In this document: positions 168 through 51,839 of the stretch, one piece after another
Layout: each line of letters starts with the position of its first letter
Numbering within the stretch: position 1 is the stretch's first letter
IMG/VR virus record: IMGVR_UViG_3300035703_000008
Location: 62,001 to 126,000 of that record
DNA: 64,000 nt
Reading direction: 5' to 3' (one strand)
Program-made: the position numbers and the translations under genes
Notes under the pieces: model-generated
Seen by the model: only the letters and a program-made list of their open reading frames with translations
The model's database searches: none
Told to the model about the DNA's origin: nothing

Positions 168-243
168 CCGACCGTAGCTCAGTGGATAGAGCATCTGCCT
201 TCTAAGCAGAGAGTCGCAGGTTCGATTCCTGCCGGTCGGGCCA
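168..243 (+). tRNA. tRNA-Arg(UCU)
   Basis: Acceptor CCGACCG/CGGTCGG, anticodon arm TCTGC-CTTCTAA-GCAGA, T-loop TTCGATT, encoded CCA. Confidence 0.96.
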
Positions 244-302
244 GTAAAAAGCATATTGCTACAAGTGCAAACAGATTTCGAGACGATGTCATATAATAAT
301 AC

Positions 303-425
303 ATGCGTTCAAAATCTGTCGTTCCTGTTGTTTTGCTCATACTCTTTGCCTTGGCTCTGATCGCTGTCGGCGAAGTCCTGGAGTGTGTGATGTTGATCAA
401 TCCCTATGAGACCTGGTGCGATTGA
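303..425 (+). CDS. small hydrophobic (single transmembrane helix) hypothetical protein, 40 aa
   Basis: Manual ORF MRSKSVVPVVLLILFALALIAVGEVLECVMLINPYETWCD* after a TATAAT box. Below the ORF-track cutoff. Confidence 0.4.
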   Translation: MRSKSVVPVVLLILFALALIAVGEVLECVMLINPYETWCD

Positions 426-450
426 TTTTGATCCACTGCCACACAAAGTT

Positions 451-456
451 TAAATA
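451..456 (+). promoter_or_regulatory. T4-like late promoter core (TAAATA) 5 nt upstream of the fpr ATG
   Basis: TAAATA-tccat-ATG. The same core recurs before many genes in the window. Confidence 0.55.
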
Positions 457-461
457 TCCAT

Positions 462-1202
462 ATGGCCACTTATACTCGTCAAACCGTTACCCATGTGCAT
501 CACTGGAGTGATCGCACCTTTACCTTTCGTTGCACACGTGATCGGTCATTCCGATTCGCTGCCGGTGAATTCGTCATGATCGGACTCGAAGTCGAGGGTC
601 GGGCCGTGCTGCGTGCCTATTCAGTGACCTCGGCGCCCTGGGAAGAAGAACTGGAGTTCCTGTCGATCAAGATCGCCGACGGCGAACTCACCAGCCGACT
701 ACAACACATACAAGTGGGCGATACCGTGTTGATCGGCGAACGTGCCACCGGTACGTTAAGGAACGAAGCTCTTGCGCCCGGGCGCGATCTCTGGATGCTG
801 GCCACTGGCACAGGACTGGCACCATTCATGAGCCTGATGCGTGACCTTGACACCATCGAGCGTTGGCAGCATCTACATGTGGTACACAGCGTGAGACATG
901 GCCAGGACTTGGCCTATCACAACCAGCTGGCGGAGGCCTTTGCCGGCGAAGACCTGCATGACTTGGTGGCCGCCAAACTGGTCTATCATCCAGTGGTCAC
1001 TGGCGAGGGTGCAGCTCGCATCGGCGATCAGCTCAAGTCAGGTCAGTTGGAGTTGGATCCTGATCAGGATCGTGTGATGCTGTGCGGCAATCTCGAGTTC
1101 AATCATGAACTGGCCGAATGGTGCCGCGGTGCAGGCATGACCGAGGGTTTGATGCGTAGGCCTGGTGGCTTCGTGCTGGAACGAGCCTTTGTGGAAAAAT
1201 AA
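462..1202 (+). CDS. fpr: ferredoxin/flavodoxin-NADP+ reductase (bacterial FPR type)
   Basis: HHWSDRTFTFRCTRD, GEFVMIGL, RAYS (FAD binding), GELTSRL, MLATGTGLAPFMS (NADP binding), MLCG and terminal ERAFVEK. Confidence 0.93.
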   Translation: MATYTRQTVTHVHHWSDRTFTFRCTRDRSFRFAAGEFVMIGLEVEGRAVLRAYSVTSAPWEEELEFLSIKIADGELTSRLQHIQVGDTVLIGERATGTLRNEALAPGRDLWMLATGTGLAPFMSLMRDLDTIERWQHLHVVHSVRHGQDLAYHNQLAEAFAGEDLHDLVAAKLVYHPVVTGEGAARIGDQLKSGQLELDPDQDRVMLCGNLEFNHELAEWCRGAGMTEGLMRRPGGFVLERAFVEK

Positions 1203-1213
1203 TAGATCTAGAT

Positions 1214-1287
1214 GCGGGTATGGTTTAATGGTAAAACGAAACCTTGCCAAGGTTTAGTTGCGAGTTCGATTCTCGCTACCCGCTCCA
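1214..1287 (+). tRNA. tRNA-Gly(GCC)
   Basis: Acceptor GCGGGTA/TACCCGC, anticodon arm AAACC-TTGCCAA-GGTTT, TTCGATT, T73 then CCA. Confidence 0.96.
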
Positions 1288-1293
1288 CGCTGG

Positions 1294-1322
1294 TTGACAT
1301 CTAAAACCCGATATTGTATACT
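1294..1322 (+). promoter_or_regulatory. sigma70-type promoter upstream of tRNA-Ser
   Basis: TTGACA-17 nt-TATACT. Confidence 0.75.
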
Positions 1323-1332
1323 AACAACAACT

Positions 1333-1423
1333 GGAGACGTGACCGAGAGGCCGAAGGTGCTCCCCTGCTAAGGGAGTATGCGCCAAAAGCGCATCGTGGG
1401 TTCGAATCCCACCGTCTCCGCCA
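1333..1423 (+). tRNA. tRNA-Ser(GCU)
   Basis: Acceptor GGAGACG/CGTCTCC, anticodon arm CTCCC-CTGCTAA-GGGAG, long variable arm, G73, CCA. Confidence 0.96.
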
Positions 1424-1427
1424 AGAC

Positions 1428-1860
1428 GTGCTGTCTAATCAACAGCTAGTGTGGTCCGCATGTCGAGAAGTGGTGTGATAGCCACAGGACCTTACCATTT
1501 GGAGCAAATGGCGCTGGCAATGCGACAATCCTCCCTGGTCGGGAAGCGGGTGGAAGGCATGCGTGATGGGATTGAGACCGCTCGGTTCTTGATGTGCTAC
1601 AATTACCGCCGCAGGGGGGAAGCACCTGTTGTCATCAGTGAAGGCGTGAGCGAAAGTATGGCCATGCCCCAACTACCAGGGGAGAGCACCACCCCGAGCT
1701 TCTGCGACTCTGTTATAGAGCGGACCTGATCCTGGCCGGTCAGGATGAGCATGCGGCGGGGGACATTGGCGTTGGATTCATAGTCCAGATAACGTTCGGG
1801 TCTTAAACACAGGGTAGTGCCTTCACCGATGACGATATCGCCACAGATATCTCGGCATAA
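1428..1860 (+). ncRNA. candidate large structured non-coding RNA (possibly GOLLD-like; unassigned)
   Basis: About 430 nt directly after tRNA-Ser with no convincing gene. Many stems: GCTGT/ACAGC, GTGGT/GCCAC, CCATTTG/CAAATGG, CAATCC/GGATTG, GCAGG/CCTGT, GCGTG/CATGC with a GAAA loop, GGGG/CCCC, CTCT/AGAG, CCTGATC/GGTCAGG, TGGAT/GTCCA, GATATC/GATATC, and long-range CCGCATG/CATGCGG. Confidence 0.5.
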
Positions 1861-1913
1861 AACGATGTCTTTGCTGTGTCTGGGTTAAATATTTTCCTAT
1901 ACGGAGTCAAATC

Positions 1914-2108
1914 ATGGATATATCCATATTACTATTATTGGCAGCAGTGGCAGTGCTTGTATTTTTGTTGAGCAAAAAACAGAACCGTCCGCAAAATCTC
2001 GATGTCAACAACGATGGCGTGCTCAATGAAAAAGATGCAGAAATATTAGATCAGAATTTGCCCAAAGATCCCGACCCCCGCGTCGAAGAATCCCGGGATC
2101 GTAGATGA
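1914..2108 (+). CDS. small membrane-anchored protein with an EF-hand/dockerin-like Ca-binding loop
   Basis: N-terminal hydrophobic helix, then DVNNDGVLNEKD. GGAG Shine-Dalgarno upstream. Confidence 0.65.
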   Translation: MDISILLLLAAVAVLVFLLSKKQNRPQNLDVNNDGVLNEKDAEILDQNLPKDPDPRVEESRDRR

Positions 2109-2494
2109 TGTTGGGCACGATGAAAAAAATCGCGTCATTGGCCTGTGTGGCATTGATATCGTGGTCATGCACCGAGGAGTCTTCTCGCACCGGTGCCGAC
2201 GGATACACATTTGGCACCAAGCAGTTTGAGAAAAAAACCGTGACTGTGGAAATAGTAGTACATCCCACACTAGAAGAACTGCAGACCGAAGCCGAAAGAA
2301 TAGGCGCTGTGCGAAGAATCAATAACCAATCTGCGAGTGTCCAGGCATTTACTCATCTTTATCCACCCAATTTTGATACTTGCACCATACACATGGTAGA
2401 TCCTTCGGTCCATTACAGTCCGGAATTCGTGGGCCACGAATTCTTACATTGCGTGTACGGTCAGTGGCACACTGACAATCACAGTCGTCAATAA
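2105..2494 (+). CDS. hypothetical secreted/lipoprotein-like protein with an HExxH zinc-peptidase motif
   Basis: Signal-like MKKIASLACVALISWSC (likely start 2120) and GHEFLHCVYG. Confidence 0.6.
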   Translation: MMLGTMKKIASLACVALISWSCTEESSRTGADGYTFGTKQFEKKTVTVEIVVHPTLEELQTEAERIGAVRRINNQSASVQAFTHLYPPNFDTCTIHMVDPSVHYSPEFVGHEFLHCVYGQWHTDNHSRQ

Positions 2495-2504
2495 ACAAGA
2501 TCCA

Positions 2505-2579
2505 GCATCGTTAGCTCAGTGGTAGAGCAGGGCCCTTACAAGGCCAAGGTCGGGAGTTCGACCCTCTCACGATGCACCA
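2505..2579 (+). tRNA. tRNA-Val(UAC)
   Basis: Acceptor GCATCGT/ACGATGC, anticodon loop CTTACAA, TTCGACC, A73, CCA. G27-A43 mismatch. Confidence 0.92.
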
Positions 2580-2594
2580 GTCATACATAAACAT

Positions 2595-3911
2595 ATGAAT
2601 CGCAAAGACACCTTCTGTATACTGCCTTTTGTGGGCATGAACGTGCATATCAATGGAGGTCTCACTCCATGCTGTTATCAAGATCGCGGACCCGATGTCA
2701 AATATCGATTCCAAGACTACCAACAATGGCGCCAAGAAGGTCTCGCAGATCTTAAACGAGATCTCCTCACCGGAGTGAGAAACAGCCAATGTCGGCGATG
2801 CTGGGACGAAGAAGATGCCGGTGCTGACAGTTACCGACAGCAACACAACAAACAATACCCCAACCATCCAGCCTGGAAGATCGACGTCACTGAGCCGGGA
2901 TGGGAAAATCTCATCTATGATTTTCGCATGCTACATCTTGAATTTGACAGTCTTTGCAATCTAAGATGCATCATGTGTCACCCCACGGTGAGCACCAGTC
3001 TCGAGACTGAATACAAGCTCAATGCCGATCGATATCAGCCCTTTACCGGAATACTAAATTTTGAAAAAATCAAGTGGACCGAGACCGAACAATTTGAAAA
3101 ACTACTGTCGGCCTTGCAAAACGTAGACACTCTCATGGTCACCGGAGGCGAGCCTCTCACCAATCCCACATTCATACGACTGCTAAAGTCATTTCCCAAT
3201 CTCGAAGAACTCAATATATCAGTGACCACTAATGCCACTGTGATCAAGGACGATGTATACGAATTACTGAGTCGGGCCAAGACCAGTTCCATCACTGTGA
3301 GCTTGGAAGGCATTGGTGCCCACAACGATTATCTGCGGCACGGCAGCGACTGGGACACCGTGGATGCCAACATACAAAAACTGGCACAATTACCTAACTG
3401 GCGATGGATACCCATCAATATAGCCACTGTTTTACAATATACCAGTCTCTGGAGCTTGTCACCATTGATCGACTACTGTATAGAACGCGGCTACAATCTC
3501 CGGATCAACCATCTGCATCACCCTGACTATCTCACATTGTCGTGCATGGAAGACAAGGAACGCAAGAAATTCGTTGCCCAGCTACGCAAGAAATTCAAGG
3601 GACTTTATATAAGTCGTAGGGAGCCACGTGGCAAACAAATCACCTATGCCATAGACACCTTACTGAACACCGAATTTAATTCCAAATCTCGAGAAAAGTT
3701 TTTTTCTTATGTTGGCATGCTAGACAGCGTGAGAGGTACCAAGTTCCATGAAATATTTGACATCAACGAAAAGAGATCCAAATGTCAAAAATCAGTATCC
3801 CCGACGTCATTGAATTCGTCAATCAGCAAGGACCCAACACCCGCGTTTATCTCGGGGCCGATTCAGAACGATTCCGCGAACGCGGAGTCTGGTGGGCCGA
3901 ATACACCGTAG
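2595..3911 (+). CDS. radical SAM protein with an N-terminal twitch/SPASM-like Cys cluster
   Basis: CNLRCIMC, TGGEP, and N-terminal FCILPF...PCC...CRRC. The C-terminal tail overlaps the next gene by 130 nt. Confidence 0.88.
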   Translation: MNRKDTFCILPFVGMNVHINGGLTPCCYQDRGPDVKYRFQDYQQWRQEGLADLKRDLLTGVRNSQCRRCWDEEDAGADSYRQQHNKQYPNHPAWKIDVTEPGWENLIYDFRMLHLEFDSLCNLRCIMCHPTVSTSLETEYKLNADRYQPFTGILNFEKIKWTETEQFEKLLSALQNVDTLMVTGGEPLTNPTFIRLLKSFPNLEELNISVTTNATVIKDDVYELLSRAKTSSITVSLEGIGAHNDYLRHGSDWDTVDANIQKLAQLPNWRWIPINIATVLQYTSLWSLSPLIDYCIERGYNLRINHLHHPDYLTLSCMEDKERKKFVAQLRKKFKGLYISRREPRGKQITYAIDTLLNTEFNSKSREKFFSYVGMLDSVRGTKFHEIFDINEKRSKCQKSVSPTSLNSSISKDPTPAFISGPIQNDSANAESGGPNTP

Positions 3912-4252
3912 TGGTAGTGATACATATCAACGGCAACAACGGCTGCCGTATTTTCGGCGAAGTCACTAGAGAACGCGACTATGATCAACGGCAGGATCGT
4001 CCCAGCATGCGTCTCATGAACGAAGTATATCGTGTCAGTGAGCTGTTCCAGAATCTCGCACCAGCCCTGACAAATCGCGAAGTGGAAGTGCATCTTGACA
4101 TCAATCCCAACGAGCTGCATGGAAGTTCTTGCGTGATACAGCAAGCCATCGGCTATATAAGAGGTACCTGCAATGTGATCCCCATGGTCAAACCGCAGGC
4201 ATTCGCGGCCAGCTATGCAGCTGACCGATTCCGCAATCTCAAAGTAGCATAA
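3782..4252 (+). CDS. RNase H-like protein (YkuK/DUF458 family)
   Basis: VYLGADS, YTVVVVIH, RLMNEV, EVHLDINP, GSS, AADR motifs. Confidence 0.8.
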   Translation: MSKISIPDVIEFVNQQGPNTRVYLGADSERFRERGVWWAEYTVVVVIHINGNNGCRIFGEVTRERDYDQRQDRPSMRLMNEVYRVSELFQNLAPALTNREVEVHLDINPNELHGSSCVIQQAIGYIRGTCNVIPMVKPQAFAASYAADRFRNLKVA

Positions 4253-4262
4253 AGGAAACATC

Positions 4263-4499
4263 GTGGCCAGAATTACCAGCGAAACCGCTGCACAGAAAGT
4301 CGGTAGCAAATATGATCTCATCCTGATCGCGTCGCGACGTGCTCGCGAACTCAGACACGGACATGCACCCATGGTCGCTGCCGAAGACGACAACGAAGTG
4401 GTCATCGCTCTCAGAGAGATCGAACAAGGTCTTGTGGGTCGCGATTATCTTCTCAAGCAACCCGATCTCAAACACGAACCAAGGAAATCACGCACATGA
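4263..4499 (+). CDS. rpoZ: RNA polymerase omega subunit homologue
   Basis: MARIT...KYDLILIASRRAREL..GHAPMV...VVIALREIEQG matches the RpoZ pattern. GTG start with AGGA Shine-Dalgarno. Confidence 0.85.
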   Translation: MARITSETAAQKVGSKYDLILIASRRARELRHGHAPMVAAEDDNEVVIALREIEQGLVGRDYLLKQPDLKHEPRKSRT

Positions 4500-4651
4500 A
4501 AGCCAACAGCCAATATCGCATGAGCAAGCAATCAAAGATCTTCTTAGGCAATGCCTGGAATCGCAGGGATCGCGAACAGTATCGCCGGGCTTTGATCCAG
4601 GCCGAATTGGACAGCAAGATTGTAGTGCGAGCCAAAATCAAAGATAATTAA
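4496..4651 (+). CDS. small basic hypothetical protein, 51 aa
   Basis: Manual ORF MKANSQYRMSKQSKIFLG...KIKDN*, ATGA-coupled to the rpoZ stop. Confidence 0.6.
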   Translation: MKANSQYRMSKQSKIFLGNAWNRRDREQYRRALIQAELDSKIVVRAKIKDN

Positions 4652-4658
4652 AAGTATT

Positions 4659-4733
4659 GCTGGATTAGCTCAGGGGTAGAGCAACCGCCTTGTAAGCGGT
4701 AGGTCGTCAGTTCGAATCCGACATCCAGCACCA
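4659..4733 (+). tRNA. tRNA-Thr(UGU)
   Basis: Acceptor GCTGGAT/ATCCAGC, anticodon arm ACCGC-CTTGTAA-GCGGT, TTCGAAT, CCA. Confidence 0.96.
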
Positions 4734-5934: not shown

Positions 5935-6488
5935 AAATCCCACTGCGACCAAGTCACAGGCCGGGCGCACCAATCTCGAGTAAACTGGAATTCCGGTGGT
6001 TGTCCAGCTAGATAGTTTTTTATCATGCGAGCTCGTTGGTCTTCGTCGTGCATGTGGTGGCTGGAATCTGGGTCTACGATCTCAATCCATTCCACAGGAT
6101 CACGGAAAATGTTGGTATTGGCGGGATTGGTAACGATCTCTACAGCACGGAATCCACAATAGTATCTGAGATCTTCCATGTCTTGTATCACGATGCCCTC
6201 GGGCTCGGCCAGTTGTGCCAGCACAGGCGCATGTGTACGACCCAATACATCCAGGGCCATCATGCGTGTATCGCCCACGATCACTTGCCAGTTGGCATCA
6301 ACAAAGATGGGTTTCCTGAGTCGATCTTGCCGGAGATTTTCTACCATCCAATTCAATCGCACGAGATTGATGCGGCTGTCACCGTGATTGGTGGGTTGAT
6401 TGGCCTGGGCTAACATCTGGTCCAGGACGCGCACAGGGCGTATGCGCTGCACGTCGCAGTGTTCGATCCAACACAGTGAAATAGTCAT
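5931..6488 (-). CDS. hypothetical protein with a ParB/sulfiredoxin-like N-terminal motif
   Basis: LRKPIFVDANWQVIVGDTRMMAL resembles ParB-N PIxV...IIDGHxRxxA. Confidence 0.55.
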   Translation of the reverse strand: MTISLCWIEHCDVQRIRPVRVLDQMLAQANQPTNHGDSRINLVRLNWMVENLRQDRLRKPIFVDANWQVIVGDTRMMALDVLGRTHAPVLAQLAEPEGIVIQDMEDLRYYCGFRAVEIVTNPANTNIFRDPVEWIEIVDPDSSHHMHDEDQRARMIKNYLAGQPPEFQFTRDWCARPVTWSQWDF

Positions 6489-6516
6489 TGACAGTGTCTC
6501 TTTGATTTGTTAGAAT
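6488..6516 (+). promoter_or_regulatory. sigma70-type promoter upstream of the RNA cluster/ssrA
   Basis: TTGACA-17 nt-TAGAAT. Confidence 0.65.
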
Positions 6517-6669
6517 AGTTATACACGATGCTGTGGTGTAAATAAAGAAGACTTCGCAGGGGGATGCGCCCGGCAGCTCTGGATCTATCTGCCGGAATCG
6601 TTTGCACGGTGAGACTCCGTGAGAACAGTGGCAGTTCCTACACGCCCTGGGAGATGCCATAAATAAGGT

Positions 6670-6962
6670 TTATCGCTGTATGAAGCGCGGCGAAATCGGT
6701 TCTGGACGCGGGTTCGATTCCCGCCCGGTCCACCATAAGCATGTTCTTTGAGGTCTTGGTCGTTACCAGCGTGGCAAAAACGGCGACAGAGCATGCTTAT
6801 GATGGGCCGGACCTGGTTTCGACAGGGCAAGGAGTAGCCAAGTGGACAGCGGGGTAGGCGATGACCCTAAATCAAGCAAAACCTATAAACGCCAATGATG
6901 AGGTGTTTGCACTGGCCGCTTGAGCCATGCCGGGGTAGCTATACCTTGTTACCAAAAATAGC
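6670..6962 (+). ncRNA. ssrA: circularly permuted (two-piece) tmRNA: acceptor piece ~6670-6735, intervening segment 6736-6803, coding piece from 6804; tag ANDEVFALAA*
   Basis: The 3' tRNA-like part (GCGGG-TTCGATT-CCCGC-CCGGTCC-A-CCA, ends 6735) lies before the 5' part (GGGCCGG-ACCTGGTTTCGAC, starts 6804). G3-U70 alanyl determinant. P2 pairing ACAGCGG/TCGCTGT. pk1 GGGT/ACCC plus TAGG/CCTA. Resume codon GCC at 6891, tag stop at 6923. Confidence 0.93.
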
Positions 6963-6988
6963 AAAACCCGCTCCGGCGGGTTTTTTTT
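6963..6988 (+). terminator. rho-independent terminator after ssrA
   Basis: AAAACCCGC-TCCG-GCGGG followed by T8. Confidence 0.88.
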
Positions 6989-7721: not shown

Positions 7722-8960
7722 ATGGACATCAAAACTCGCGTAAATCTTTCGTCGACCATGGGAGCAACATTTGCCTGGTACGATTTTGCTATCTTTAACA
7801 TCGCTGTGGCACTGATATTCCCCCAGCTGTTTTTCACGGGCATGGGTTTTCTCATCCCTGTATTGGTGTTTGCCGTAGGTACAGTGGCTCGCCCTTTGGG
7901 CAGCTTGGTTTTTGGCTACATCGGAGATCGGCTCGGTCGAAAAACAGCTTTGATATCTACCCTGTATCTCACTGGCATCACCACTGTGGCCATTGGCCTC
8001 ATGCCCACATATCAGGACATAGGCGTGATCGCCACTGTGCTGCTGATCACGGCTCGCTTGATACAGACCGTGGCCGTGGGAGGAGAATGGGCCGCGGCCT
8101 CGACCATGATGCTGGAATACAATGTGGAAAGTACCAGGAAAGGATTTATCTCCAGTTTTATCACTTCGGGATTCGCACTGGCACACATCCTCGCTTCCTT
8201 GGTTTTCATGATAGTCACGCAGTTCGGCGATGAATTCTTTGCCACTGTTGGCTGGAGGATTCCTTTCTTACTCAGCGCCTTCATGTTGTTGATCGGTGTA
8301 TATGTGCGTCGTAAAATCCTGGAAACTCCCGAGTTTGAGCAAATGAAATCCCAGGGAACCATACAAAAAAATCCAGTGGCTGCGCTGTTCAGGGATCATC
8401 TCAGGCCCATGGTAGTGGGTGCCTTGTCTGTGAGCCTAGGGCCTGCCTGGTTTTATACCCTGATCACTGCAGGATCAGCTTATGTGCTCAGCGCTGGACT
8501 ATTGACTCGGTCCGACCTCACTCAACAGCAGTTTGCGGCATGGTGGGTGATACTGGGCATCATGTTGTTGTGTGGATGGCTGATCGACAAAGTCAAGCCC
8601 TACTACATGTTTGTGGCCACTTCGGTGTTTTCAGTCATATTGGCCTTGCCAGTGATCGGTTGGCTGCAGCAAGGGCAAATTTTGTGGGCCATGGTAGGCA
8701 CTGGGGTGATCATGACCCCGGCACTGATGACAGCTCCTTATCTTTTTTGCAAAATGTACCCGGCGCCGGTTCGACAAACCGGTAGCGGATGGACCTATGG
8801 CATAGGACTGGCATTGTCGGGACTGTTTACGGTGCTGGCACAAAAAGTGGTGGGCACCACCGGTGATATCTACTCGCTGATCTATGTGTTTGGAGTGTTG
8901 ACTGTGATCACTTTGGTTACCGGCGGACTTTACCTGAGAAAGTACAGCCAAGAATCATGA
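7722..8960 (+). CDS. MFS transporter, metabolite:H+ symporter (MHS; ShiA/ProP-like)
   Basis: GATFAWYDFAIF, ARPLGSLVFGYIGDRLGRK, GGEW, GWRIPF, ETPEF; about 12 hydrophobic segments. Confidence 0.92.
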   Translation: MDIKTRVNLSSTMGATFAWYDFAIFNIAVALIFPQLFFTGMGFLIPVLVFAVGTVARPLGSLVFGYIGDRLGRKTALISTLYLTGITTVAIGLMPTYQDIGVIATVLLITARLIQTVAVGGEWAAASTMMLEYNVESTRKGFISSFITSGFALAHILASLVFMIVTQFGDEFFATVGWRIPFLLSAFMLLIGVYVRRKILETPEFEQMKSQGTIQKNPVAALFRDHLRPMVVGALSVSLGPAWFYTLITAGSAYVLSAGLLTRSDLTQQQFAAWWVILGIMLLCGWLIDKVKPYYMFVATSVFSVILALPVIGWLQQGQILWAMVGTGVIMTPALMTAPYLFCKMYPAPVRQTGSGWTYGIGLALSGLFTVLAQKVVGTTGDIYSLIYVFGVLTVITLVTGGLYLRKYSQES

Positions 8961-10414
8961 TGCTGATAGATCTCTTACTGAATCACCCCAATGGTGATCA
9001 TATCGTATATCGTGGCACTGGTGTGGTGACCGTGAGAGATCTACAAACCATGTGCCAAAGCACTGCAAGATCTCTCAGAGACATGAATGTCGGTCCCGGG
9101 GATCGAGTGGTACTGATCGGCAATGACAGCGCTGAATGGGCTGCTACATTTTGGGCTCTTGTGCTGTTGGGAGCCCACGCTGTGATCCTACATGCAAATA
9201 TGCCGCAAGAACACGTGAACAACGTGATAAAAAAGCACCGAGTCAAACTGGTTTGCACAGATCAATCGAGATTCGACGATGTCGCTGTTTTTGACATAAA
9301 GTCAAAGGTTAAATCGAACATCGGACAGCCGATCGCACCATTTGATCATAAATCAAACACGCTGCTGAGCTGGCCTTCGTCGGGCACCAATGGCACATTC
9401 AAGCTCATCGAACATACCAATGCCAGTTTATGTGCGGCTACAATGTCTCTGGATAATTATGCATCCAGTCGCGAGGTACATCGCGGGGACGTGATTTTTT
9501 GCGGTGCCAAGATGTCGTTTGGCCTAGGATGGCTGTTCAATGTGCTGGGATGTTTGCACTTGCATATCACATCAGTGATTGGTACCGGCCTTGCAGAGTT
9601 GCGTAGTTTTTCGGCGATCGCCGAAAAACATCAGGTACAACATGTGGTAGTCACCCCTTACATATTAGACATCATACACAGAACATCCATGTGCCTTCCT
9701 GACAGTGTCAGGACTATATGTACCAGTGCGGAACCATTGCCTGATCGATTGATTGCGGACATAAAACAAAAATTTTCAATTGATGTAACAAACATCTACG
9801 GTCTTTGTGAATTGTTTATCGTGACCATGGCCGACCAAGATCGATCTTCCAACAGTGCTGGAAAGGTTGTCAACGGAGTAAATTATCGTTTGATCAGCGA
9901 TGATGGAAATGTTATCGGCCTGACTGGATGCGGAATCTTGCAGATCAAAAGTGGATCACAATTTGTTGGCTATCTCGATGACCCGGAATCTACTCGACAG
10001 GTGCTAAGAGATGGTTGGGTACATACCAACGACATGGTCGATGTGCTCGAGGACGGAGAAGTGATTTTCCTAGGGCGAGCCAATTCATGTATAAAAGTCA
10101 AAGGTCATTGGGTATCTTTGCTAGAAATCGAGCAGGCGATATCTCAGATCAGTGGTATCAATGATTGTGTGGTAGTAAAATCCACAGACTCTCAGGGATT
10201 CGATTCGATTTCAGCTTTTGTAGTCGTCGACAACAATTCTGATCTGAGATGTGTGGACACGATCAGAGATCGCCTGAGACGTGATCTAGGTAAAAAATAT
10301 CTCATGCCTTCAGACATATATCTCATCGATGAGATTCCTCGCACAGTGAATCTCAAAAAACTTCGTAATATTTCAGCCATGAATCAATGGCTAGAACAAA
10401 GGAACATGATATGA
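8957..10414 (+). CDS. AMP-forming acyl-CoA ligase (ANL adenylating enzyme), copy 1
   Basis: P-loop variant SSGTNGTFK, YGLCE, GWVHTND, GRANSCIKVKGHWVSLLEIE, IPRTVNLKKLR. ATGA-coupled to the MFS gene. Confidence 0.87.
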   Translation: MMLIDLLLNHPNGDHIVYRGTGVVTVRDLQTMCQSTARSLRDMNVGPGDRVVLIGNDSAEWAATFWALVLLGAHAVILHANMPQEHVNNVIKKHRVKLVCTDQSRFDDVAVFDIKSKVKSNIGQPIAPFDHKSNTLLSWPSSGTNGTFKLIEHTNASLCAATMSLDNYASSREVHRGDVIFCGAKMSFGLGWLFNVLGCLHLHITSVIGTGLAELRSFSAIAEKHQVQHVVVTPYILDIIHRTSMCLPDSVRTICTSAEPLPDRLIADIKQKFSIDVTNIYGLCELFIVTMADQDRSSNSAGKVVNGVNYRLISDDGNVIGLTGCGILQIKSGSQFVGYLDDPESTRQVLRDGWVHTNDMVDVLEDGEVIFLGRANSCIKVKGHWVSLLEIEQAISQISGINDCVVVKSTDSQGFDSISAFVVVDNNSDLRCVDTIRDRLRRDLGKKYLMPSDIYLIDEIPRTVNLKKLRNISAMNQWLEQRNMI

Positions 10415-11862
10415 ACTTTGCTGAATTTATTTTTGATCGGGTACGAAATCATGCTGGTGTGGCCTATTATTGCGGCGACCAGCAACTGTTGTTTCGAGAC
10501 CTCGAACCCCGAGTGAGAGAAACTGCTGGCTTCCTTGGCAGCCAGGGTGTGGATCATCACAGCACTGTGATGATCAATCTTCCCAACAGCCCCGAGTGGC
10601 CGGTGATATTTTATGCTCTTACCTTACTGGGTGCCCGGATCATGGTCACCCATGCCAATCTCGATCCGATCAGCCTCAAAACCATCGCTGCCAGGATCAA
10701 GTCCACACACATCATCGCTGTGACTGAGCGGGATCTAGGTCCGATCAATGTGTTGCTAGAACACATAACACATGACAGATCGGGATTTTTTTACAACGGC
10801 AGTCATGACTACAACGATGATGATCTGCACTTCATGATCACCACATCGGGCACCAGCGGTCGGCAGAAGATCGTCAAGCATCGCCATATTTCTTGTGTGA
10901 ATCTTTGTCGCGAGTTTGACCGTCGTGAAACCATCTATCAGGACCTCGATGAGTCGTCGGTGATCCTGTGTACAGCTAATCTAAACTTTCTCTACGGTCT
11001 TGGCACCTGTGTTTGTCTAGGTCCCAGCCAGGGTGTGCCCACCGTGATCTTCGACCAAACTCTCACTCCCAAAAATATCATCGGGTTGGCCAATCGATTC
11101 CGAGTCACACATCTGTTCAGTGGCCCAGCTGGGTACATGCTGATGACCAAGTATCCCGGAGACGACCTCCTACCCGACTCTGTCAAGTGTTGCGTGTCCG
11201 GCGGAGAGAAACTGCTGGCCAGCGTGTCCAGAGAATTTGAAAACAAGTTTGGACATCGAGTCTACGACTGCATCGGATGCAGCGAGTTGTTTTGGTTTTT
11301 TCTCGGGGAATGGTCTGGCAACATCAGATCCGGCAGCATGGGTCGGCCTTTCCCCGGGCACGATATCAAGGTGGTCAATGCCGACGGTACTCCGTGTCCG
11401 GTTGGCGAAATTGGCTACCTTGTGGTCAAGACCAACGTGATCAGTGCTGGTTATTTTGACGATGCTGAAGGCAACAGATTCAGCTTCCGCGACGGATGGT
11501 TTTGGACCAATGATCTCGTCAAGGTTGACGAGGATGGATACTTCTTTTATCTGGGCCGGCACGGACAACTGCACAAGGTGCACGGGATCTGGGTCAATCT
11601 CCTGGAAGTGGAAGACTATGTGAGTGCCTTGCCGGAAATCACCGACTGCCTGGCCAAGTTCGTGATCGACGATCGTGGACTGGTCGAAGTGGAAGCACAG
11701 GTAGTGACATCTCTGCAGGAGCCAGCAGCTGACATACGCCGTCGGCTACTGGAGATAGTTCCGCCCTGCCAGATGCCAAAATTTGTTACCTTGGTCAATG
11801 AAATACCTCGCACCATGAACGGCAAAAAAATACGTGATCTCGCTATCATCAATCAATCATGA
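10411..11862 (+). CDS. AMP-forming acyl-CoA ligase, benzoate-CoA-ligase-like, copy 2
   Basis: TTSGTSGRQK, YDCIGCSE, GSMGRPFPG, DGWFWTNDL, KVHGIWVNLLEVE, IPRTMNGKKIR. Start taken at the ATGA overlap (10411) rather than the ORF-track start 10387. Confidence 0.88.
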   Translation: MNFAEFIFDRVRNHAGVAYYCGDQQLLFRDLEPRVRETAGFLGSQGVDHHSTVMINLPNSPEWPVIFYALTLLGARIMVTHANLDPISLKTIAARIKSTHIIAVTERDLGPINVLLEHITHDRSGFFYNGSHDYNDDDLHFMITTSGTSGRQKIVKHRHISCVNLCREFDRRETIYQDLDESSVILCTANLNFLYGLGTCVCLGPSQGVPTVIFDQTLTPKNIIGLANRFRVTHLFSGPAGYMLMTKYPGDDLLPDSVKCCVSGGEKLLASVSREFENKFGHRVYDCIGCSELFWFFLGEWSGNIRSGSMGRPFPGHDIKVVNADGTPCPVGEIGYLVVKTNVISAGYFDDAEGNRFSFRDGWFWTNDLVKVDEDGYFFYLGRHGQLHKVHGIWVNLLEVEDYVSALPEITDCLAKFVIDDRGLVEVEAQVVTSLQEPAADIRRRLLEIVPPCQMPKFVTLVNEIPRTMNGKKIRDLAIINQS

Positions 11863-12590
11863 TCAAATCGCGCCCTTTGATTTTCATCGGTTCTCGATAC
11901 TACATGAACGATCTAGCCATCACAGCCGAGCTCATGGGTCTGGAAGTGCTGGGAATACTGGATCATCAGTATCACGGCAACACCGACGAAATTTCGAGCA
12001 TACCAGTGATCGGCAGCGATCACTGGTTGCTGGATCCCGAGAATCGAGAAGCACGAGTCTGGAAAAACACCTGTGATTTTTTTGTAGCCACACTGGACAC
12101 CGGTGAGCAAGAACGTGATCCAGCGAAAAATCGCACTCGACTCCGACAACAACGAATCAACATGCTCGAAGAGCTGGCACTTGGCACTGTCAATCTCATT
12201 GATCCTGAATCGCGCATCGTGCGCGATCAACGGTCGAGATTCTCACGTATCTCTCTGGGTCGCGGCATTTATGTGGCTCCGTTCGTGGACATCAATCACG
12301 AAGTAGTGATAGGCGACTTTTCCACCTTTGAGCATCAGAGCTATATCGGACATCATATCACCATCGGCAAGAACGTCACAGTATTGCCCACTGCTCGTAT
12401 ATGCCACTGCGACATCGGTGATCACGCTGTGATTGGCTACGGGTCCTGGACTAGACACGACGAACGCAAGAGTCGCTATCGTATAGGTTCTAGAAGCACA
12501 GTGTGGAGCCACACCTGTATCGATCGAAGCTGCCCCGACGATCATGTCTATACCAATGTTGGTAAGATTTTACGGAAAAGATCGGTATAG
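11859..12590 (+). CDS. NeuD/PglD-like sugar acyltransferase (left-handed beta-helix)
   Basis: N-terminal Rossmann-like LIFIGS...LEVLGILD, then hexapeptide repeats (ISLGRGIYV, VVIGDFSTF, ITIGKNVTV, CDIGDHAVIG). ATGA-coupled. Confidence 0.8.
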   Translation: MIKSRPLIFIGSRYYMNDLAITAELMGLEVLGILDHQYHGNTDEISSIPVIGSDHWLLDPENREARVWKNTCDFFVATLDTGEQERDPAKNRTRLRQQRINMLEELALGTVNLIDPESRIVRDQRSRFSRISLGRGIYVAPFVDINHEVVIGDFSTFEHQSYIGHHITIGKNVTVLPTARICHCDIGDHAVIGYGSWTRHDERKSRYRIGSRSTVWSHTCIDRSCPDDHVYTNVGKILRKRSV

Positions 12591-21793: not shown

Positions 21794-22465
21794 ATGAAAG
21801 TACAACTGGTTTCGTATTCACAACCCACTGCGGAGTTCCAGAACCAAGGCATCACAGATGCACAAGAATTAGTGGCTTTTTGTGCCAGGGTCAGCAACCC
21901 CAGCAATCAATACAACGTGGAAACGTCAGAAAAACTCATCAGATATCTTGTCAAGCATCAACACTGGAGTCCACTTGAAATGGTTTCTGTGTGCCTGGAA
22001 ATCGAGACCACCCGAGACATCGCCCGGCAGATGCTGAGACATCGCAGCTTCTCGTTCCAGGAGTTCAGCCAACGCTATGCTGACCCCACACAAGATCTCG
22101 CATTTGAGATACGCGATGCTCGACTGCAAGATCCCCAAAATCGCCAGAATTCTGTGAGCTTGGATTTTTCCAATCCCGACGATCGCGAACTGGCACATCT
22201 CTGGGCAGAAAAACAACGCGAAGTGATCGGCGCAGCCCGTTCTGTATATACCTGGGCCATAACGAATGGCATCGCTCGAGAACAAGCTCGCGCAGTGTTG
22301 CCCGAAGGCAATACCGTGAGCCGTCTTTACATGAATGGCACACTGAGATCCTGGATTCACTACATCGAGCTGAGATCGGCCAATGGTACACAGCTTGAAC
22401 ACCAAGATGTGGCCCGTGCCTGTGCCCAAGTCATCACCCAGGTGTTTCCCATGACAGGTGAATAG
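21794..22465 (+). CDS. thyX: FAD-dependent thymidylate synthase
   Basis: ARVS, HWSPLEM, ThyX motif RHRSFSFQEFSQRY, ARAVLP, TLRSWIHYIELR, EH. AGGAGG Shine-Dalgarno. Confidence 0.96.
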   Translation: MKVQLVSYSQPTAEFQNQGITDAQELVAFCARVSNPSNQYNVETSEKLIRYLVKHQHWSPLEMVSVCLEIETTRDIARQMLRHRSFSFQEFSQRYADPTQDLAFEIRDARLQDPQNRQNSVSLDFSNPDDRELAHLWAEKQREVIGAARSVYTWAITNGIAREQARAVLPEGNTVSRLYMNGTLRSWIHYIELRSANGTQLEHQDVARACAQVITQVFPMTGE

Positions 22466-22717
22466 TTGATCAAGATACAGTTCCATTCGTTTGGCATGGG
22501 CGATGTCGAGGACCCGGAGCTCTATGCTGCCCATCCCATACGGGAATGGCAGAACACCGAACATGGTCAATGGGTCATGGAACACGGTCGTGACCTCACG
22601 TTCCACACGCAGGTAGACCACAACTCCATGGGCTACCGCGTTTTCATCACAGGATATCTACAAGAAGACATCCATGCCACAGAATATTTCCTAAGATGGC
22701 CCAAGGTAAAATACTAG
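22466..22717 (+). CDS. hypothetical phage protein
   Basis: 83-aa ORF (FGMGDVEDPELYAA...GQWVMEH) between thyX and the epimerase. Confidence 0.65.
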   Translation: MIKIQFHSFGMGDVEDPELYAAHPIREWQNTEHGQWVMEHGRDLTFHTQVDHNSMGYRVFITGYLQEDIHATEYFLRWPKVKY

Positions 22718-23670
22718 TCACCGGTGGACTTGGTTTCATCGGACACAATATAGTAGCACAGCTACAGGCTCTGGGTCATGCAATGGTCATCGTCGATGCT
22801 GTGTCAGACTATGGCATCATACCAAGAGATGAGCTAGAAGGTCTGGTAAGAGAACGAGCACGTCTCATCGATCAGACTGATCTCTATCTCACTGACATCA
22901 CAGATCCCGGCCTGGATCACATCTTCCAAGACCACGACATTGCCACAGTGATCCACTTGGCCAGTTTTCCCCGACAAAAAGTGGTTAATCGAGATCCAGT
23001 GTCGGGCAGTCGCGTCATGAGTGAAGGCCTGCTCAATCTCCTGGAACTCAGTGTTGCCCATCATGTTGATCGATTCGTGTATGTAAGTTCCAGCATGGTC
23101 TATGGTGAATTCACTGATGACACCACCGAAGACCATCCATGTGCTCCACAAGGACAATACGGGATCATGAAGCTGGCTGGAGAATGGCTCACACGCGACT
23201 ACACCCAACGCCGTGGCATGTCGCATGTGATCGTGCGTCCCAGTGCTGTGTACGGAGCCAGAGACGTGGAAGATCGCGTGGTCAGCCAGTTCATGATGGC
23301 TGCACATCGCGGCGAAACTCTACGAGTGCGTGGTGCCGGCGAGTGCCTAGATTTCACTGATGTGAGAGACACTGCACGCGGTATCGTTCTCGCTGCTGTC
23401 ACCCCTGCTGCTGCCAACAACACTTACAATATCACTCGTGGACGCGGTCGTAGCTTGCAGGAAGCCGCAGAGATCGCTGTAAAAATCTCAGGATCGGGCA
23501 CTATCGATGTTCTGGATCGCGATCCTTTGTTCCCCAGTCGGGGTGCATTAAATATAGATCGAGCCCGGAGAGATCTTAGCTTTGAACCCACTATAGACAT
23601 CGAGCAAGGCTTTGAAGACTACTACCGCTGGATTACGGATCCCATTCGCAGGTCTACCTCGTCAGTATAA
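22696..23670 (+). CDS. NAD-dependent nucleotide-sugar epimerase/dehydratase (extended SDR)
   Basis: ILVTGGLGFIG, HLAS, SSSMVYG, catalytic YGIMK (YxxxK), VRPSAVYG. Confidence 0.92.
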   Translation: MAQGKILVTGGLGFIGHNIVAQLQALGHAMVIVDAVSDYGIIPRDELEGLVRERARLIDQTDLYLTDITDPGLDHIFQDHDIATVIHLASFPRQKVVNRDPVSGSRVMSEGLLNLLELSVAHHVDRFVYVSSSMVYGEFTDDTTEDHPCAPQGQYGIMKLAGEWLTRDYTQRRGMSHVIVRPSAVYGARDVEDRVVSQFMMAAHRGETLRVRGAGECLDFTDVRDTARGIVLAAVTPAAANNTYNITRGRGRSLQEAAEIAVKISGSGTIDVLDRDPLFPSRGALNIDRARRDLSFEPTIDIEQGFEDYYRWITDPIRRSTSSV

Positions 23671-51831: not shown

Positions 51832-51839
51832 TATTTATA
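51832..51839 (-). promoter_or_regulatory. T4-type late promoter TATAAATA upstream of the tail fibre gene
   Basis: Perfect TATAAATA on the minus strand. A second CATAAATA lies at 51857-51864. Confidence 0.75.

What the first reader, a model, noticed from the sequence alone, without database searches (positions are those of the whole stretch)
6670..6962. Phage-encoded circularly permuted two-piece tmRNA with its own tag ANDEVFALAA
Seen: the CCA-ending acceptor piece precedes the 5' piece. A 68-nt spacer folds into a hairpin (TAAGCATGTTCT/AGAGCATGCTTA) that would hold the ends together for RNase P and 3' processing. G3-U70, P2 and pk1 are intact, a TAAATA late promoter core sits just upstream, and a terminator follows. 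Established: permuted ssrA is known in alphaproteobacteria, some cyanobacteria and one betaproteobacterial lineage; the tag resembles betaproteobacterial ANDERFALAA. Inference: the phage supplies ribosome rescue late in infection, possibly against tRNA- or mRNA-cleaving defences. No smpB in this window.
Basis: partly seen in the sequence, partly recalled or inferred. Interest (0 to 1): 0.78.

Follow-up and report, generated by a model that had tools for sequence, protein, structure and literature searches.

The report
Jumbo-phage two-piece tmRNA gene
An uncultured giant phage carries a complete, well-conserved copy of the split ("circularly permuted") ribosome-rescue RNA tmRNA, which is a real gene but belongs to a kind already reported in phages.

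Summary
Window 6674-6988 (+) holds a complete circularly permuted tmRNA gene. ARAGORN calls it tmRNA* with tag ANDEVFALAA. Rfam beta_tmRNA scores 155 bits (threshold 84) and tmRNA_permuted 134 bits (threshold 47).

The anatomy holds: CCA end at 6735, G1 at 6804, G3-U70, T-arm, P2, pk1, the 68-nt spacer hairpin and the terminator. Sixty-seven unique homologues on viral contigs support most of these features by covariation. The tag is under purifying selection: against its nearest tag relative, 7 of 10 codons differ and all changes are synonymous.

The window is part of a 209-kb subsurface-metagenome contig (IMG/VR UViG) of a jumbo phage distantly related to Pseudomonas phage PA5oct. Related 223-kb and 364-kb contigs also carry the gene.

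The novelty is overstated. Phage-encoded two-piece tmRNAs are published (Buchholz 2022: 53 unique). Huge-phage tmRNAs were noted in 2020, and a single pattern scan here found at least 85 on viral contigs.

"Late" expression is unsupported. The only strong promoter is sigma-70-like at 6488-6516. The TAAATA motif is conserved at a fixed distance in 16 of 67 homologues, but its role is unknown. The window has no smpB, and no RNA data exist for this phage.

In passing: in related contigs the excised spacer often encodes a small protein.

The parts
6488..6516 (+). Sigma-70-type promoter: TTGACA (6488-6493), 17 nt, TGnTAGAAT (-10 at 6511-6516). Predicted start is near 6523, about 150 nt upstream of the tmRNA.
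   Evidence: 11 of 12 consensus matches plus an extended -10. Matches of 11/12 or better number 8 in the window against 0.8 in shuffles. No terminator lies between it and the gene. Function not tested.
6523..6673 (+). Putative leader between the promoter and the tmRNA. It holds a doubtful 32-codon ORF (6564-6662).
   Evidence: No Rfam match. The fold is not better than shuffles, z = -0.8. The ORF was read from the sequence and has a poor Shine-Dalgarno spacing.
6660..6666 (+). TAAATAA motif, 7-8 nt upstream of the first tmRNA nucleotide.
   Evidence: TAAATA lies at the same distance (7-9 nt) in 16 of 67 unique viral homologues, often overlapping the stop codon of unrelated upstream ORFs. Other homologues have a sigma-70 -10 hexamer at that place. 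It is not enriched in the window.
6674..6735 (+). Acceptor piece (3' tRNA-like half). It comprises the P2 5' strands (6674-6679 and 6699-6704), the T-arm (6708-6724), the acceptor 3' strand (6725-6731), discriminator A 6732 and CCA 6733-6735.
   Evidence: Rfam alignment. In 67 homologues the T-arm is 100% canonical with 4 pair types at one position, and P2a is 65-67 of 67 paired.
6736..6803 (+). Intervening segment, presumed to be excised. Closing helix 6736-6747 / 6788-6799, then the unpaired tail UGAU 6800-6803 before G1.
   Evidence: MFE -22.1 kcal/mol, z = -2.4. The closing helix is present in all 62 unique homologous spacers of 40 nt or more despite 56 distinct arm sequences: 10.8 of 12 positions paired against 8.5 in the cross-paired control. 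The tail is TGAT in 50 of 62.
6804..6890 (+). 5' part of the coding piece. It comprises the acceptor 5' strand GGGCCGG (6804-6810, G3 = 6806), the D-loop analogue, the P2 3' strands (6823-6828 and 6846-6851) and pseudoknot pk1 (6852-6877).
   Evidence: G3-U70 in 65 of 67 homologues. pk1 stem 1 is 6852-6855/6864-6867. pk1 stem 2 is 6862-6864/6872-6874 plus 6858-6859/6876-6877. Stem 2 shows compensatory changes: window UGA/UCA, L069 CUG/CAG, L119 CGG/CCG.
6891..6923 (+). Tag reading frame GCC...GCT TGA, encoding ANDEVFALAA plus stop.
   Evidence: ARAGORN. Against L028, 7 of the last 10 codons differ and all are synonymous. Many other homologues show 7-8 synonymous and 1 nonsynonymous change.
6938..6962 (+). 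3' hairpin GCUAU / AUAGC with the conserved loop ACCUUGUUACCAAAA.
   Evidence: Modelled helix of RF01850. The loop sequence matches the family consensus and L008.
6963..6988 (+). Intrinsic terminator: 9-bp stem AAAACCCGC/GCGGGUUUU followed by a T-run.
   Evidence: Terminator scan. It is also the last helix of RF01850.
168..4733 (+). Five co-oriented tRNA genes (Arg-TCT, Gly-GCC, Ser-GCT, Val-TAC, Thr-TGT) upstream of the tmRNA. Together they form a translation-RNA island.
   Evidence: ARAGORN and Rfam tRNA hits. A sigma-70-like promoter at 1294-1322 directly precedes tRNA-Ser.

Best explanation
This is a functional ssrA gene of the circularly permuted, betaproteobacterial-type form, carried by an uncultured jumbo phage.

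Shown:
- All sequence and structure features that define a two-piece tmRNA are present.
- They are conserved with covariation across related phage contigs.
- The tag peptide is under purifying selection.
- The gene lies in a co-oriented island of phage tRNA genes, downstream of a strong sigma-70-type promoter.

Inferred:
- Host RNA polymerase transcribes a precursor, either from about 6523 or from a signal at the TAAATAA motif.
- The acceptor stem forms across the spacer, whose closing helix holds the two halves together.
- RNase P cuts 5' of G6804 after the conserved UGAU tail, and 3' trimming stops at CCA6735. This releases a 62-nt acceptor piece and a coding piece of about 185 nt, held together by the acceptor stem and P2.
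- Host AlaRS charges the RNA through G3-U70, and host SmpB delivers it. No smpB is in the window.
- Stalled ribosomes resume on GCC 6891 and add ANDEVFALAA, a host-type ALAA degron.

The likely benefit is to keep ribosomes free while the phage remodels or degrades host RNA. This fits with the tRNA genes as a translation-support module. The timing (early or late) is not known.
For: - Detection: (ARAGORN tmRNA*; RF01850 at 155 bits; RF04321 at 134 bits).
- Anatomy.
- Covariation in 67 unique viral homologues: acceptor stem with G3-U70 in 65 of 67, T-arm 67 of 67 paired at all 5 positions, P2a 65-67 of 67. pk1 has compensatory changes.
- Spacer helix is conserved.
- Tag: 7 synonymous and 0 nonsynonymous codon differences against L028.
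- Phage context:
  - The window is part of the 208,932-bp JGI contig Ga0310140_0000114, which is IMGVR_UViG_3300035703_000008.
  - The best isolate matches are PA5oct-like jumbo phages, Phosso and Atu_ph07, at 39-51% amino-acid identity for three proteins, one of them a virion/baseplate protein.
  - Neighbouring proteins fall in virus-only Atlas clusters.
- The gene is kept in relatives. L028 (223 kb), L049 (364 kb), L111 and L089 have a permuted tmRNA beside homologues of the window's 1784-aa protein and carbamoyltransferase, the latter at 47-73% identity.
- Promoter.
- Precedent: PMC9004378 (two-piece tmRNA in phage Melnitz; 53 unique two-piece tmRNAs in isolate phages) and PMC7162821 (tmRNA and SmpB in huge phages).
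Against: - There is no expression, processing, alanylation or tagging data for this phage. The RNA runs found hold only relatives, and run X16, of unknown kind, holds exact contigs that span both junctions, as DNA or an unprocessed precursor would.
- The window has no smpB. The other 145 kb of the contig were not examined.
- The host is unknown, so compatibility with host SmpB and AlaRS is assumed.
- The middle of P2 has non-canonical pairs in the Rfam alignment, and P2b/P2c could not be confirmed on the MAFFT alignment.
Confidence: 0.78

Rival explanations
1. The RNA works mainly as a decoy or regulator. It would soak up host SmpB, AlaRS or EF-Tu, or compete with host tmRNA, to shut down or re-route host trans-translation rather than to rescue ribosomes for the phage.
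For: A phage tRNA-like-domain-only tmRNA (mycobacteriophage DS6A) exists. A similar molecule inhibits tmRNA in E. coli (PMC4131195, PMC11915505). No smpB is encoded in the window, so the RNA must use the host's.
Against: The full mRNA-like domain is kept: pk1, the resume codon, a 10-codon frame and the stop. The tag evolves almost only by synonymous change. That pattern is expected only if the peptide is made and matters. A decoy would not need it.
Confidence: 0.08
2. The tmRNA tags proteins for a phage-specific purpose. Examples are bulk degradation of host nascent proteins to recycle amino acids, or sensing of host translational stress, rather than general ribosome rescue.
For: Both ideas have been suggested for phage tmRNAs (PMC9004378; PMC7162821). 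The tag ends in ALAA, a protease-targeting C-terminus by established knowledge of ssrA tags.
Against: Nothing in the sequence distinguishes this from ordinary rescue. The mechanism of entry (empty A site on a non-stop ribosome) is the same. It is a difference in benefit, not in mechanism.
Confidence: 0.1
3. The gene is not a phage gene. It would be a host ssrA on a chimeric or mis-binned contig, on a prophage flank, or an attachment-site remnant.
For: IMG/VR prophage calls can include host flanks. A scan with E. coli SmpB returned many UViGs with smpB at the contig end. Genomic islands often integrate at ssrA (PMC11915505).
Against: - The gene lies about 68.6 kb inside a 209-kb contig.
- Phage-like genes and phage-style interspersed tRNA genes lie on both sides.
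- GC is even at 46-53% across the 64 kb.
- It is a complete gene, not a 3' fragment.
- Related jumbo-phage contigs keep it.
- No species-representative bacterial genome has a tmRNA with the same 26-nt T-arm and acceptor end.
- The same DNA assembles independently in a Logan run, though that run may be the same sample.
Confidence: 0.03

Closest known systems
Betaproteobacterial two-piece tmRNA (Rfam RF01850 beta_tmRNA; Sharkady & Williams 2004, as cited in PMC9004378 and PMC11915505)
   Same: The gene order is the same: P2 5' strand, T-arm, acceptor 3' strand with CCA, spacer, acceptor 5' strand, P2 3' strand, pk1, tag, 3' hairpin with the CCUUGUUACC loop, terminator. It matches the full length of the model at 155 bits. 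The tag is of the ANDExFALAA type.
   Different: It is carried by a phage. The acceptor stem is GGGCCGG/CCGGUCC rather than the consensus GGGGnUG/CAnCUCC. The bacterial -35/-10 promoter that the model includes is replaced by TAAATAA, with an 11-nt deletion in the alignment. No bacterial representative genome shares the 26-nt 3' end in a tmRNA.
Two-piece tmRNA of marine phages (OM43 phage Melnitz, pelagimyophages, cyanophages; Buchholz et al. 2022, PMC9004378)
   Same: It is a phage-encoded, circularly permuted ssrA called by ARAGORN, in a lytic myovirus-type genome that also carries tRNAs, with no phage smpB reported nearby.
   Different: Melnitz's tmRNA is of the alphaproteobacterial type and carries a glutamine riboswitch in its 3' domain. 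The one here is beta-type, shows no riboswitch and comes from a subsurface jumbo phage. That survey found two-piece forms mostly in marine and aquatic phages.
Unannotated permuted tmRNAs of isolated Xanthomonas and Stenotrophomonas phages (JGB6, BUDD, X1, vB_Sm_QDWS359, DLP_6)
   Same: They are the nearest hits among 50,697 deposited phage genomes. Five records were checked (the sixth, X1, was not examined further). All give ARAGORN tmRNA* and RF04321 scores of 77-137 bits, and two also pass RF01850.
   Different: DNA similarity covers only about 65 nt of the T-arm and acceptor. The tags differ (ANDSVYAQAIAA, ANDDSFAPMAIAA and others). The phage genomes are unrelated. In GenBank these loci carry no tmRNA feature, and in several a 'hypothetical protein' CDS is drawn over them.
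One-piece tmRNAs of mycobacteriophages (Bxz1 group) and Bacillus phage G (PMC4131195)
   Same: They are phage-encoded ssrA genes in large phages rich in tRNA genes.
   Different: They have the standard, non-permuted gene form and Gram-positive or actinobacterial hosts.

Membership tests
tmRNA (ssrA), circularly permuted / two-piece form | Covariance-model match above the curated threshold | tested here: met
   RF01850 scores 155.1 bits against 84. RF04321 scores 134 bits against 47. Both match their full model length.
tmRNA (ssrA), circularly permuted / two-piece form | tRNA-like domain: 7-bp acceptor stem with G3-U70, discriminator A, encoded CCA, and a T-arm with the GGUUCGAUUCC loop | tested here: met
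   GGGCCGG (6804-6810) pairs with CCGGUCC (6725-6731). G6806 pairs with U6729. A6732 and CCA 6733-6735 follow. G-U is kept in 65 of 67 homologues, and the T-arm is paired in 67 of 67.
tmRNA (ssrA), circularly permuted / two-piece form | Permuted order: the CCA-ending 3' half is encoded upstream of the 5' half, separated by an intervening segment | tested here: met
   ARAGORN calls tmRNA*. The 68-nt segment 6736-6803 has a closing helix that is conserved in homologues.
tmRNA (ssrA), circularly permuted / two-piece form | mRNA-like domain: Ala resume codon, short frame ending in a hydrophobic Ala-rich degron, stop codon | tested here: met
   GCC 6891 through TGA 6923 encodes ANDEVFALAA. Codon changes are synonymous-dominated against homologues.
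tmRNA (ssrA), circularly permuted / two-piece form | P2 helix joining the two pieces, and pseudoknot pk1 upstream of the resume codon | tested here: met
   P2a (6699-6704 / 6823-6828) is paired in 65-67 of 67 with covariation. The outer P2 (6674-6679 / 6846-6851) is 6 bp in the window. The middle of P2 has mismatches and was not confirmed. Both pk1 stems are present, with compensatory changes.
tmRNA (ssrA), circularly permuted / two-piece form | Processing of the precursor into two RNAs (RNase P at G1, 3' maturation at CCA) | tested here: inconclusive
   No RNA run holds this phage. Run X16, of unknown kind, has exact contigs spanning both junctions. A lake metatranscriptome has very deep 31-32-nt contigs of relatives that end at the CCA position.
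tmRNA (ssrA), circularly permuted / two-piece form | Alanylation, SmpB binding, and tagging of non-stop products | not testable with these tools
   These need biochemistry or genetics. No smpB is in the window: phmmer --max with E. coli SmpB gives all E > 1, and tblastn gives a best E of 0.097.
Phage-encoded gene (as opposed to host ssrA) | Lies inside a viral genome, with viral genes on both sides | tested here: met
   The gene lies in the interior of a 209-kb IMG/VR contig. PA5oct, Phosso and Atu_ph07 homologues lie at 15.6-19.6 kb and 50.3-51.8 kb of the window. Five interspersed tRNA genes lie upstream. Related jumbo-phage contigs share the gene.
T4-type late promoter (TATAAATA, no -35) | Match to TATAAATA at -10, and recurrence upstream of late (structural) genes | tested here: inconclusive
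   CATAAATA at 6658-6665 matches 7 of 8. TATAAATA occurs once in the window, at 51832-51839 (-), just upstream of a baseplate-like gene. ATAAATA occurs 3 times against 3.7 expected. In homologues the conserved motif is TAAATAA, with no conserved TA before it.

The most novel reading that the evidence does not exclude
Beta-type permuted tmRNA may be a long-standing heirloom of several lineages of large phages rather than a recent host capture.

Three points fit this reading:
- It has its own upstream signal (TAAATAA at a fixed 7-8 nt).
- It has a conserved spacer architecture: ACCA, closing helix, UGAU, then G1.
- In many relatives the spacer doubles as an mRNA for a small protein. These are often membrane-type peptides of 23-26 aa, and the stop codon is the conserved UGA just before G1.

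The excised spacer would then be a functional product in its own right. Phages, rather than bacteria, might be a main reservoir or vector of this gene form. The window's own spacer has no such ORF, so at most it would be a member that lost it.
Probability: 0.2. Interest if true: 0.65.

Novelty: new member of a known kind. Interest (0 to 1): 0.3.

Why it matters
On its own it matters modestly. It adds a well-documented, beta-type example to the known set of phage-encoded two-piece tmRNAs.

It also shows three further things:
- The gene is conserved across a group of uncultured jumbo phages of 200-360 kb.
- Such genes are common on viral contigs and are missed or mis-annotated in deposited phage genomes.
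- The comparative set gives a concrete processing model: closing helix plus a 4-nt UGAU leader.

If the phage tmRNA works with host SmpB, it is direct evidence that large phages invest in ribosome rescue as well as in tRNA supply.

Tried and rejected
1. I guessed an N4-like phage from the 3783-aa ORF, and then Xanthomonas phage XacN1 (50% GC, tRNA-rich). XacN1 is in the phage collection and does not match. The big ORF has FG-GAP and DUF2460 hits, not an RNA polymerase.
2. I searched for the bacterial donor or host with a 26-nt T-arm and acceptor pattern in 185,579 species genomes. The only hit was a tRNA-Ala of a Saccharibacteria MAG. Atlas neighbours hint only at Pseudomonadota.
3. RNA evidence for processing was sought. 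The RNA runs hold 7-16% of the words, which are relatives only. Laying them was inconclusive.
4. I looked for smpB elsewhere on the contig through a viral-contig scan with E. coli SmpB. It returned only E. coli-like prophage flanks and was uninformative.
5. I looked for a riboswitch or other known RNA in the 150-nt leader or the 3' domain and found none. The sub-threshold hits all sit on the terminator hairpin. The leader fold is not better than shuffles.
6. Late-promoter enrichment was not found.
7. An MFE co-fold of the two pieces did not recover the tRNA-like fold and was discarded in favour of the covariance-model structure.
8. The original descriptions of two-piece tmRNA (PMC16621, PMC516066) are not held. 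What is said about them rests on papers that cite them.

Full report
**What is there.**

Window 6674-6988 (+) is a complete circularly permuted tmRNA gene. ARAGORN calls a permuted tmRNA with tag ANDEVFALAA. Rfam's betaproteobacterial model RF01850 matches end to end at 155.1 bits (threshold 84). The general permuted model RF04321 matches at 134 bits (threshold 47).

- The acceptor piece is 6674-6735 and ends in ACCA.
- The spacer is 68 nt (6736-6803).
- The coding piece starts at G6804.
- The 7-bp acceptor stem GGGCCGG/CCGGUCC includes G3(6806)-U70(6729).
- The T-arm is at 6708-6724.
- The tag frame runs from GCC 6891 to TGA 6923.
- A hairpin with the family's conserved CCUUGUUACC loop lies at 6938-6962.
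- An intrinsic terminator follows at 6963-6988.
- The spacer arms 6736-6747 and 6788-6799 pair at 12 of 12 positions, one of them G-U. The spacer folds better than shuffles, z = -2.4.

**Comparative support.**

ARAGORN found permuted tmRNAs in about 85 of them. From these I took 67 unique genes, including the window's.

Structure counts on this set:
- G3-U70 is kept in 65 of 67.
- All five T-arm pairs are canonical in 67 of 67, with up to four pair types at one position.
- The P2 helix next to the tRNA-like domain is paired in 65-67 of 67, with covariation.

pk1 is supported in both stems. The second stem shows full compensatory changes: window UGA/UCA, L069 CUG/CAG, L119 CGG/CCG. The middle of P2 has mismatches in the Rfam alignment and could not be confirmed on a sequence-only alignment.

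The spacer varies from 29 to 248 nt and in sequence (56 distinct 5' arms among 62 spacers), yet its architecture is constant. A helix starts directly after CCA and ends 4-5 nt before G1. The unpaired tail is TGAT in 50 of 62. The helix has 10.8 of 12 positions paired, against 8.5 when arms of different genes are cross-paired. Processing itself is inferred.

**The tag is translated, or at least selected as a peptide.**

Against the related contig L028, whose tag ends in the same ANDEVFALAA, 7 of the 10 codons differ and every change is synonymous. Many other homologues show 7-8 synonymous changes and 1 nonsynonymous change. This argues against a pure decoy role.

**Whose gene is it?**

A window protein is encoded on the 208,932-bp JGI contig Ga0310140_0000114 of metagenome 3300035703. 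This contig is IMGVR_UViG_3300035703_000008, and the sample is a subsurface metagenome. The tmRNA lies about 68.6 kb into that contig.

No deposited phage is close at the DNA level. By protein, the best isolate relatives are the PA5oct group of Pseudomonas jumbo phages, Sinorhizobium phage Phosso and Agrobacterium phage Atu_ph07. Identity is 39-51% for an ATPase, a phrog_1314 protein and a virion/baseplate protein.

Further points on context:
- Five tRNA genes are interspersed with ORFs on the same strand just upstream.
- Neighbouring proteins fall in virus-only clusters.
- GC is even across the window.
- Contigs L028 (223 kb), L049 (364 kb), L111 and L089 carry a permuted tmRNA next to homologues of the window's 1784-aa protein and carbamoyltransferase, the latter at 47-73% identity.

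The gene is therefore a conserved feature of a group of related large phages. It is not a host flank or an assembly chimera.

The host is unknown. No bacterial species representative has a tmRNA with that end.

**Expression.**

TATAAATA occurs once in the window, and ATAAATA occurs three times against 3.7 expected. The other two copies do sit just upstream of a baseplate-like gene, which is suggestive at most.

The only strong promoter upstream is sigma-70-like: TTGACA, 17 nt, TGnTAGAAT at 6488-6516, with no terminator before the gene. Such near-consensus promoters are ten-fold enriched in the window (8 against 0.8 in shuffles). One of them directly precedes tRNA-Ser.

The 150-nt leader has no Rfam match and no unusual fold.

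The TAAATA motif is nevertheless not noise.
- It lies 7-9 nt upstream of the first tmRNA nucleotide in 16 of 67 homologues, often overlapping the stop codon of unrelated upstream genes.
- Other homologues have a sigma-70 -10 hexamer at the same place.
- In three homologues TAAATA is itself preceded by TTGACA at 18 nt.

It is most simply a -10-like or 5'-end signal. Whether it acts early or late cannot be said.

**Partner and RNA evidence.**

No RNA run holds this phage. Laying the best candidates showed only relatives, plus exact contigs of unknown kind that span both junctions. Processing, charging and tagging therefore remain untested.

**How it most likely works.**

- A precursor is made by host polymerase.
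- The acceptor stem and P2 form across the spacer helix.
- RNase P cuts after the UGAU tail at G6804, and 3' maturation stops at CCA6735.
- The two pieces stay base-paired.
- Host AlaRS charges the RNA through G3-U70, and host SmpB delivers it to ribosomes stalled on broken mRNAs.
- Translation resumes at GCC 6891 and adds ANDEVFALAA, a host-type degron.

With the adjacent tRNA genes it forms a translation-support module. I put this at about 0.78. The rivals are a decoy or regulator (0.08), special-purpose tagging (0.10) and a non-phage origin (0.03).

**Comparison with what is known.**

It passes every sequence-level test for membership of the permuted tmRNA family, beta type. Phage carriage is not new.
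- Buchholz et al. 2022 described a two-piece tmRNA in OM43 phage Melnitz. They counted 53 unique two-piece forms among 133 unique tmRNAs in 18,146 phage genomes, mostly marine (PMC9004378).
- The 2025 tmRNA database lists 79 bacteriophage sequences (PMC11915505).
- Al-Shayeb et al. 2020 noted tmRNAs and SmpB in huge phages (PMC7162821).
- Earlier lists had only one-piece forms in mycobacteriophages and phage G (PMC4131195).

This example differs in three ways. It is a beta-type copy that closely matches the bacterial consensus over its whole length. It sits in a subsurface PA5oct-like jumbo phage. And it is shared with related contigs. It is a new member of a known kind.

**Verdict.**

Interest is modest at 0.3.

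The most novel reading left open, at about 0.2, has three parts: these phage tmRNA genes are an old phage heirloom with their own signals; the 'discarded' spacer is itself functional; and in relatives the spacer encodes small proteins.

Noticed in passing
Related loci L093, L123, L102, L111, L048, L008, L046, L106, L011, L049, L078, L108, L124 (intervening segments of their permuted tmRNA genes): In 13 of 55 unique spacers of 60 nt or more, a Shine-Dalgarno-preceded ATG opens an ORF that fills at least 75% of the spacer. The interior-shuffled control gives a mean of 2.6 and a maximum of 6. Most of these ORFs end at the conserved TGA of ..TTATGAT just before G1. One family is a 23-26-aa hydrophobic peptide (for example MNDNLNSLAIGVIVVLVVFALVLL) with mostly synonymous differences between close members (10 synonymous against 5 nonsynonymous). 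Others are 38-73 aa. The window's own spacer has no such ORF. I found no report of protein genes nested in the tmRNA spacer.
   Followed up: partly
window 6660-6666, and the same position in L025, L027, L030, L040, L041, L054, L064, L066, L088, L093, L101, L110, L113, L116, L124: TAAATA(A) lies 7-9 nt upstream of the first tmRNA nucleotide in 16 of 67 homologues. It often doubles as the Lys-stop (AAA TAA) end of unrelated upstream protein genes. Other homologues have a sigma-70 -10 hexamer at that place. It is a conserved signal of unknown role.
   Followed up: partly
L001 (Xanthomonas phage JGB6, OQ436456.1, about 52.7 kb), L002 (Stenotrophomonas phage vB_Sm_QDWS359), L003 (DLP_6, KU682439.2), L004 (Xanthomonas phage BUDD); Xanthomonas phage X1 not fetched: In the four fetched isolate phage records (JGB6, vB_Sm_QDWS359, DLP_6, BUDD), ARAGORN finds permuted tmRNA genes (tmRNA*; RF04321 at 77-137 bits). 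The GenBank records do not annotate them. In several, a 'hypothetical protein' CDS is drawn across them. As far as I recall, their hosts have one-piece tmRNA. I did not verify this here. Xanthomonas phage X1 matched the window's T-arm and acceptor region in the phage search but was not examined further.
   Followed up: partly
window 2595-3911 (+), 7722-12590 (+), 22696-24739 (+), 34103-35584 (-), 37483-46122 (-): The window holds an unusually large biosynthesis-like gene set for a phage:
- at least six radical SAM proteins; the one scanned against NCBIfam (2595-3911) is of the twitch-domain N_Twi_rSAM type (273 bits);
- two AMP-binding adenylating enzymes;
- an MFS transporter;
- a hexapeptide transferase;
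- a NAD-dependent sugar epimerase/dehydratase;
- a DegT aminotransferase;
- a Nol-type carbamoyltransferase;
- ThyX at 21794-22465 and a ferredoxin-NADP reductase-like protein at 462-1202.
This suggests a sugar, nucleotide or peptide modification pathway.
   Followed up: partly
window 52632-63983 (-) and 24708-30062 (-): Two giant ORFs are present. The 3783-aa protein has FG-GAP repeats and a weak DUF2460 (phage tail) hit. The 1784-aa internally repetitive protein has no family hit. Homologues of the 1784-aa protein sit right beside the tmRNA in related contigs L028, L111 and L049.
   Followed up: partly
window 1294, 6488, 14294, 14558, 15562, 18288, 61000 (+) and 35887 (-): Eight near-consensus sigma-70 promoters (11 of 12 matches, mostly TTGACC/A-17-TATAAT) are found against 0.8 expected. 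Six of them lie on the + strand in the first 18.3 kb. The phage probably relies on host RNA polymerase for this region.
   Followed up: partly
L010 5858-5932 (Saccharibacteria MAG CAYJWW010000004.1): An ordinary tRNA-Ala(UGC) has exactly the same 26-nt T-arm, acceptor 3' strand and CCA as the phage tmRNA. This is a reminder that this half of the tmRNA is indistinguishable from tRNA-Ala.
   Followed up: no
window 6713-6827 in run X16: A 2025 run of unrecorded kind holds contigs identical to the window across the spacer and both junctions. The same or a nearly identical phage therefore occurs in a second data set.
   Followed up: no
loci L131-L210: Many IMG/VR 'viral' contigs from E. coli genomes begin or end with the host smpB gene. 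Prophage calls next to ssrA therefore include host flank. This is a caution when counting 'viral' tmRNA or smpB genes on short contigs.
   Followed up: no
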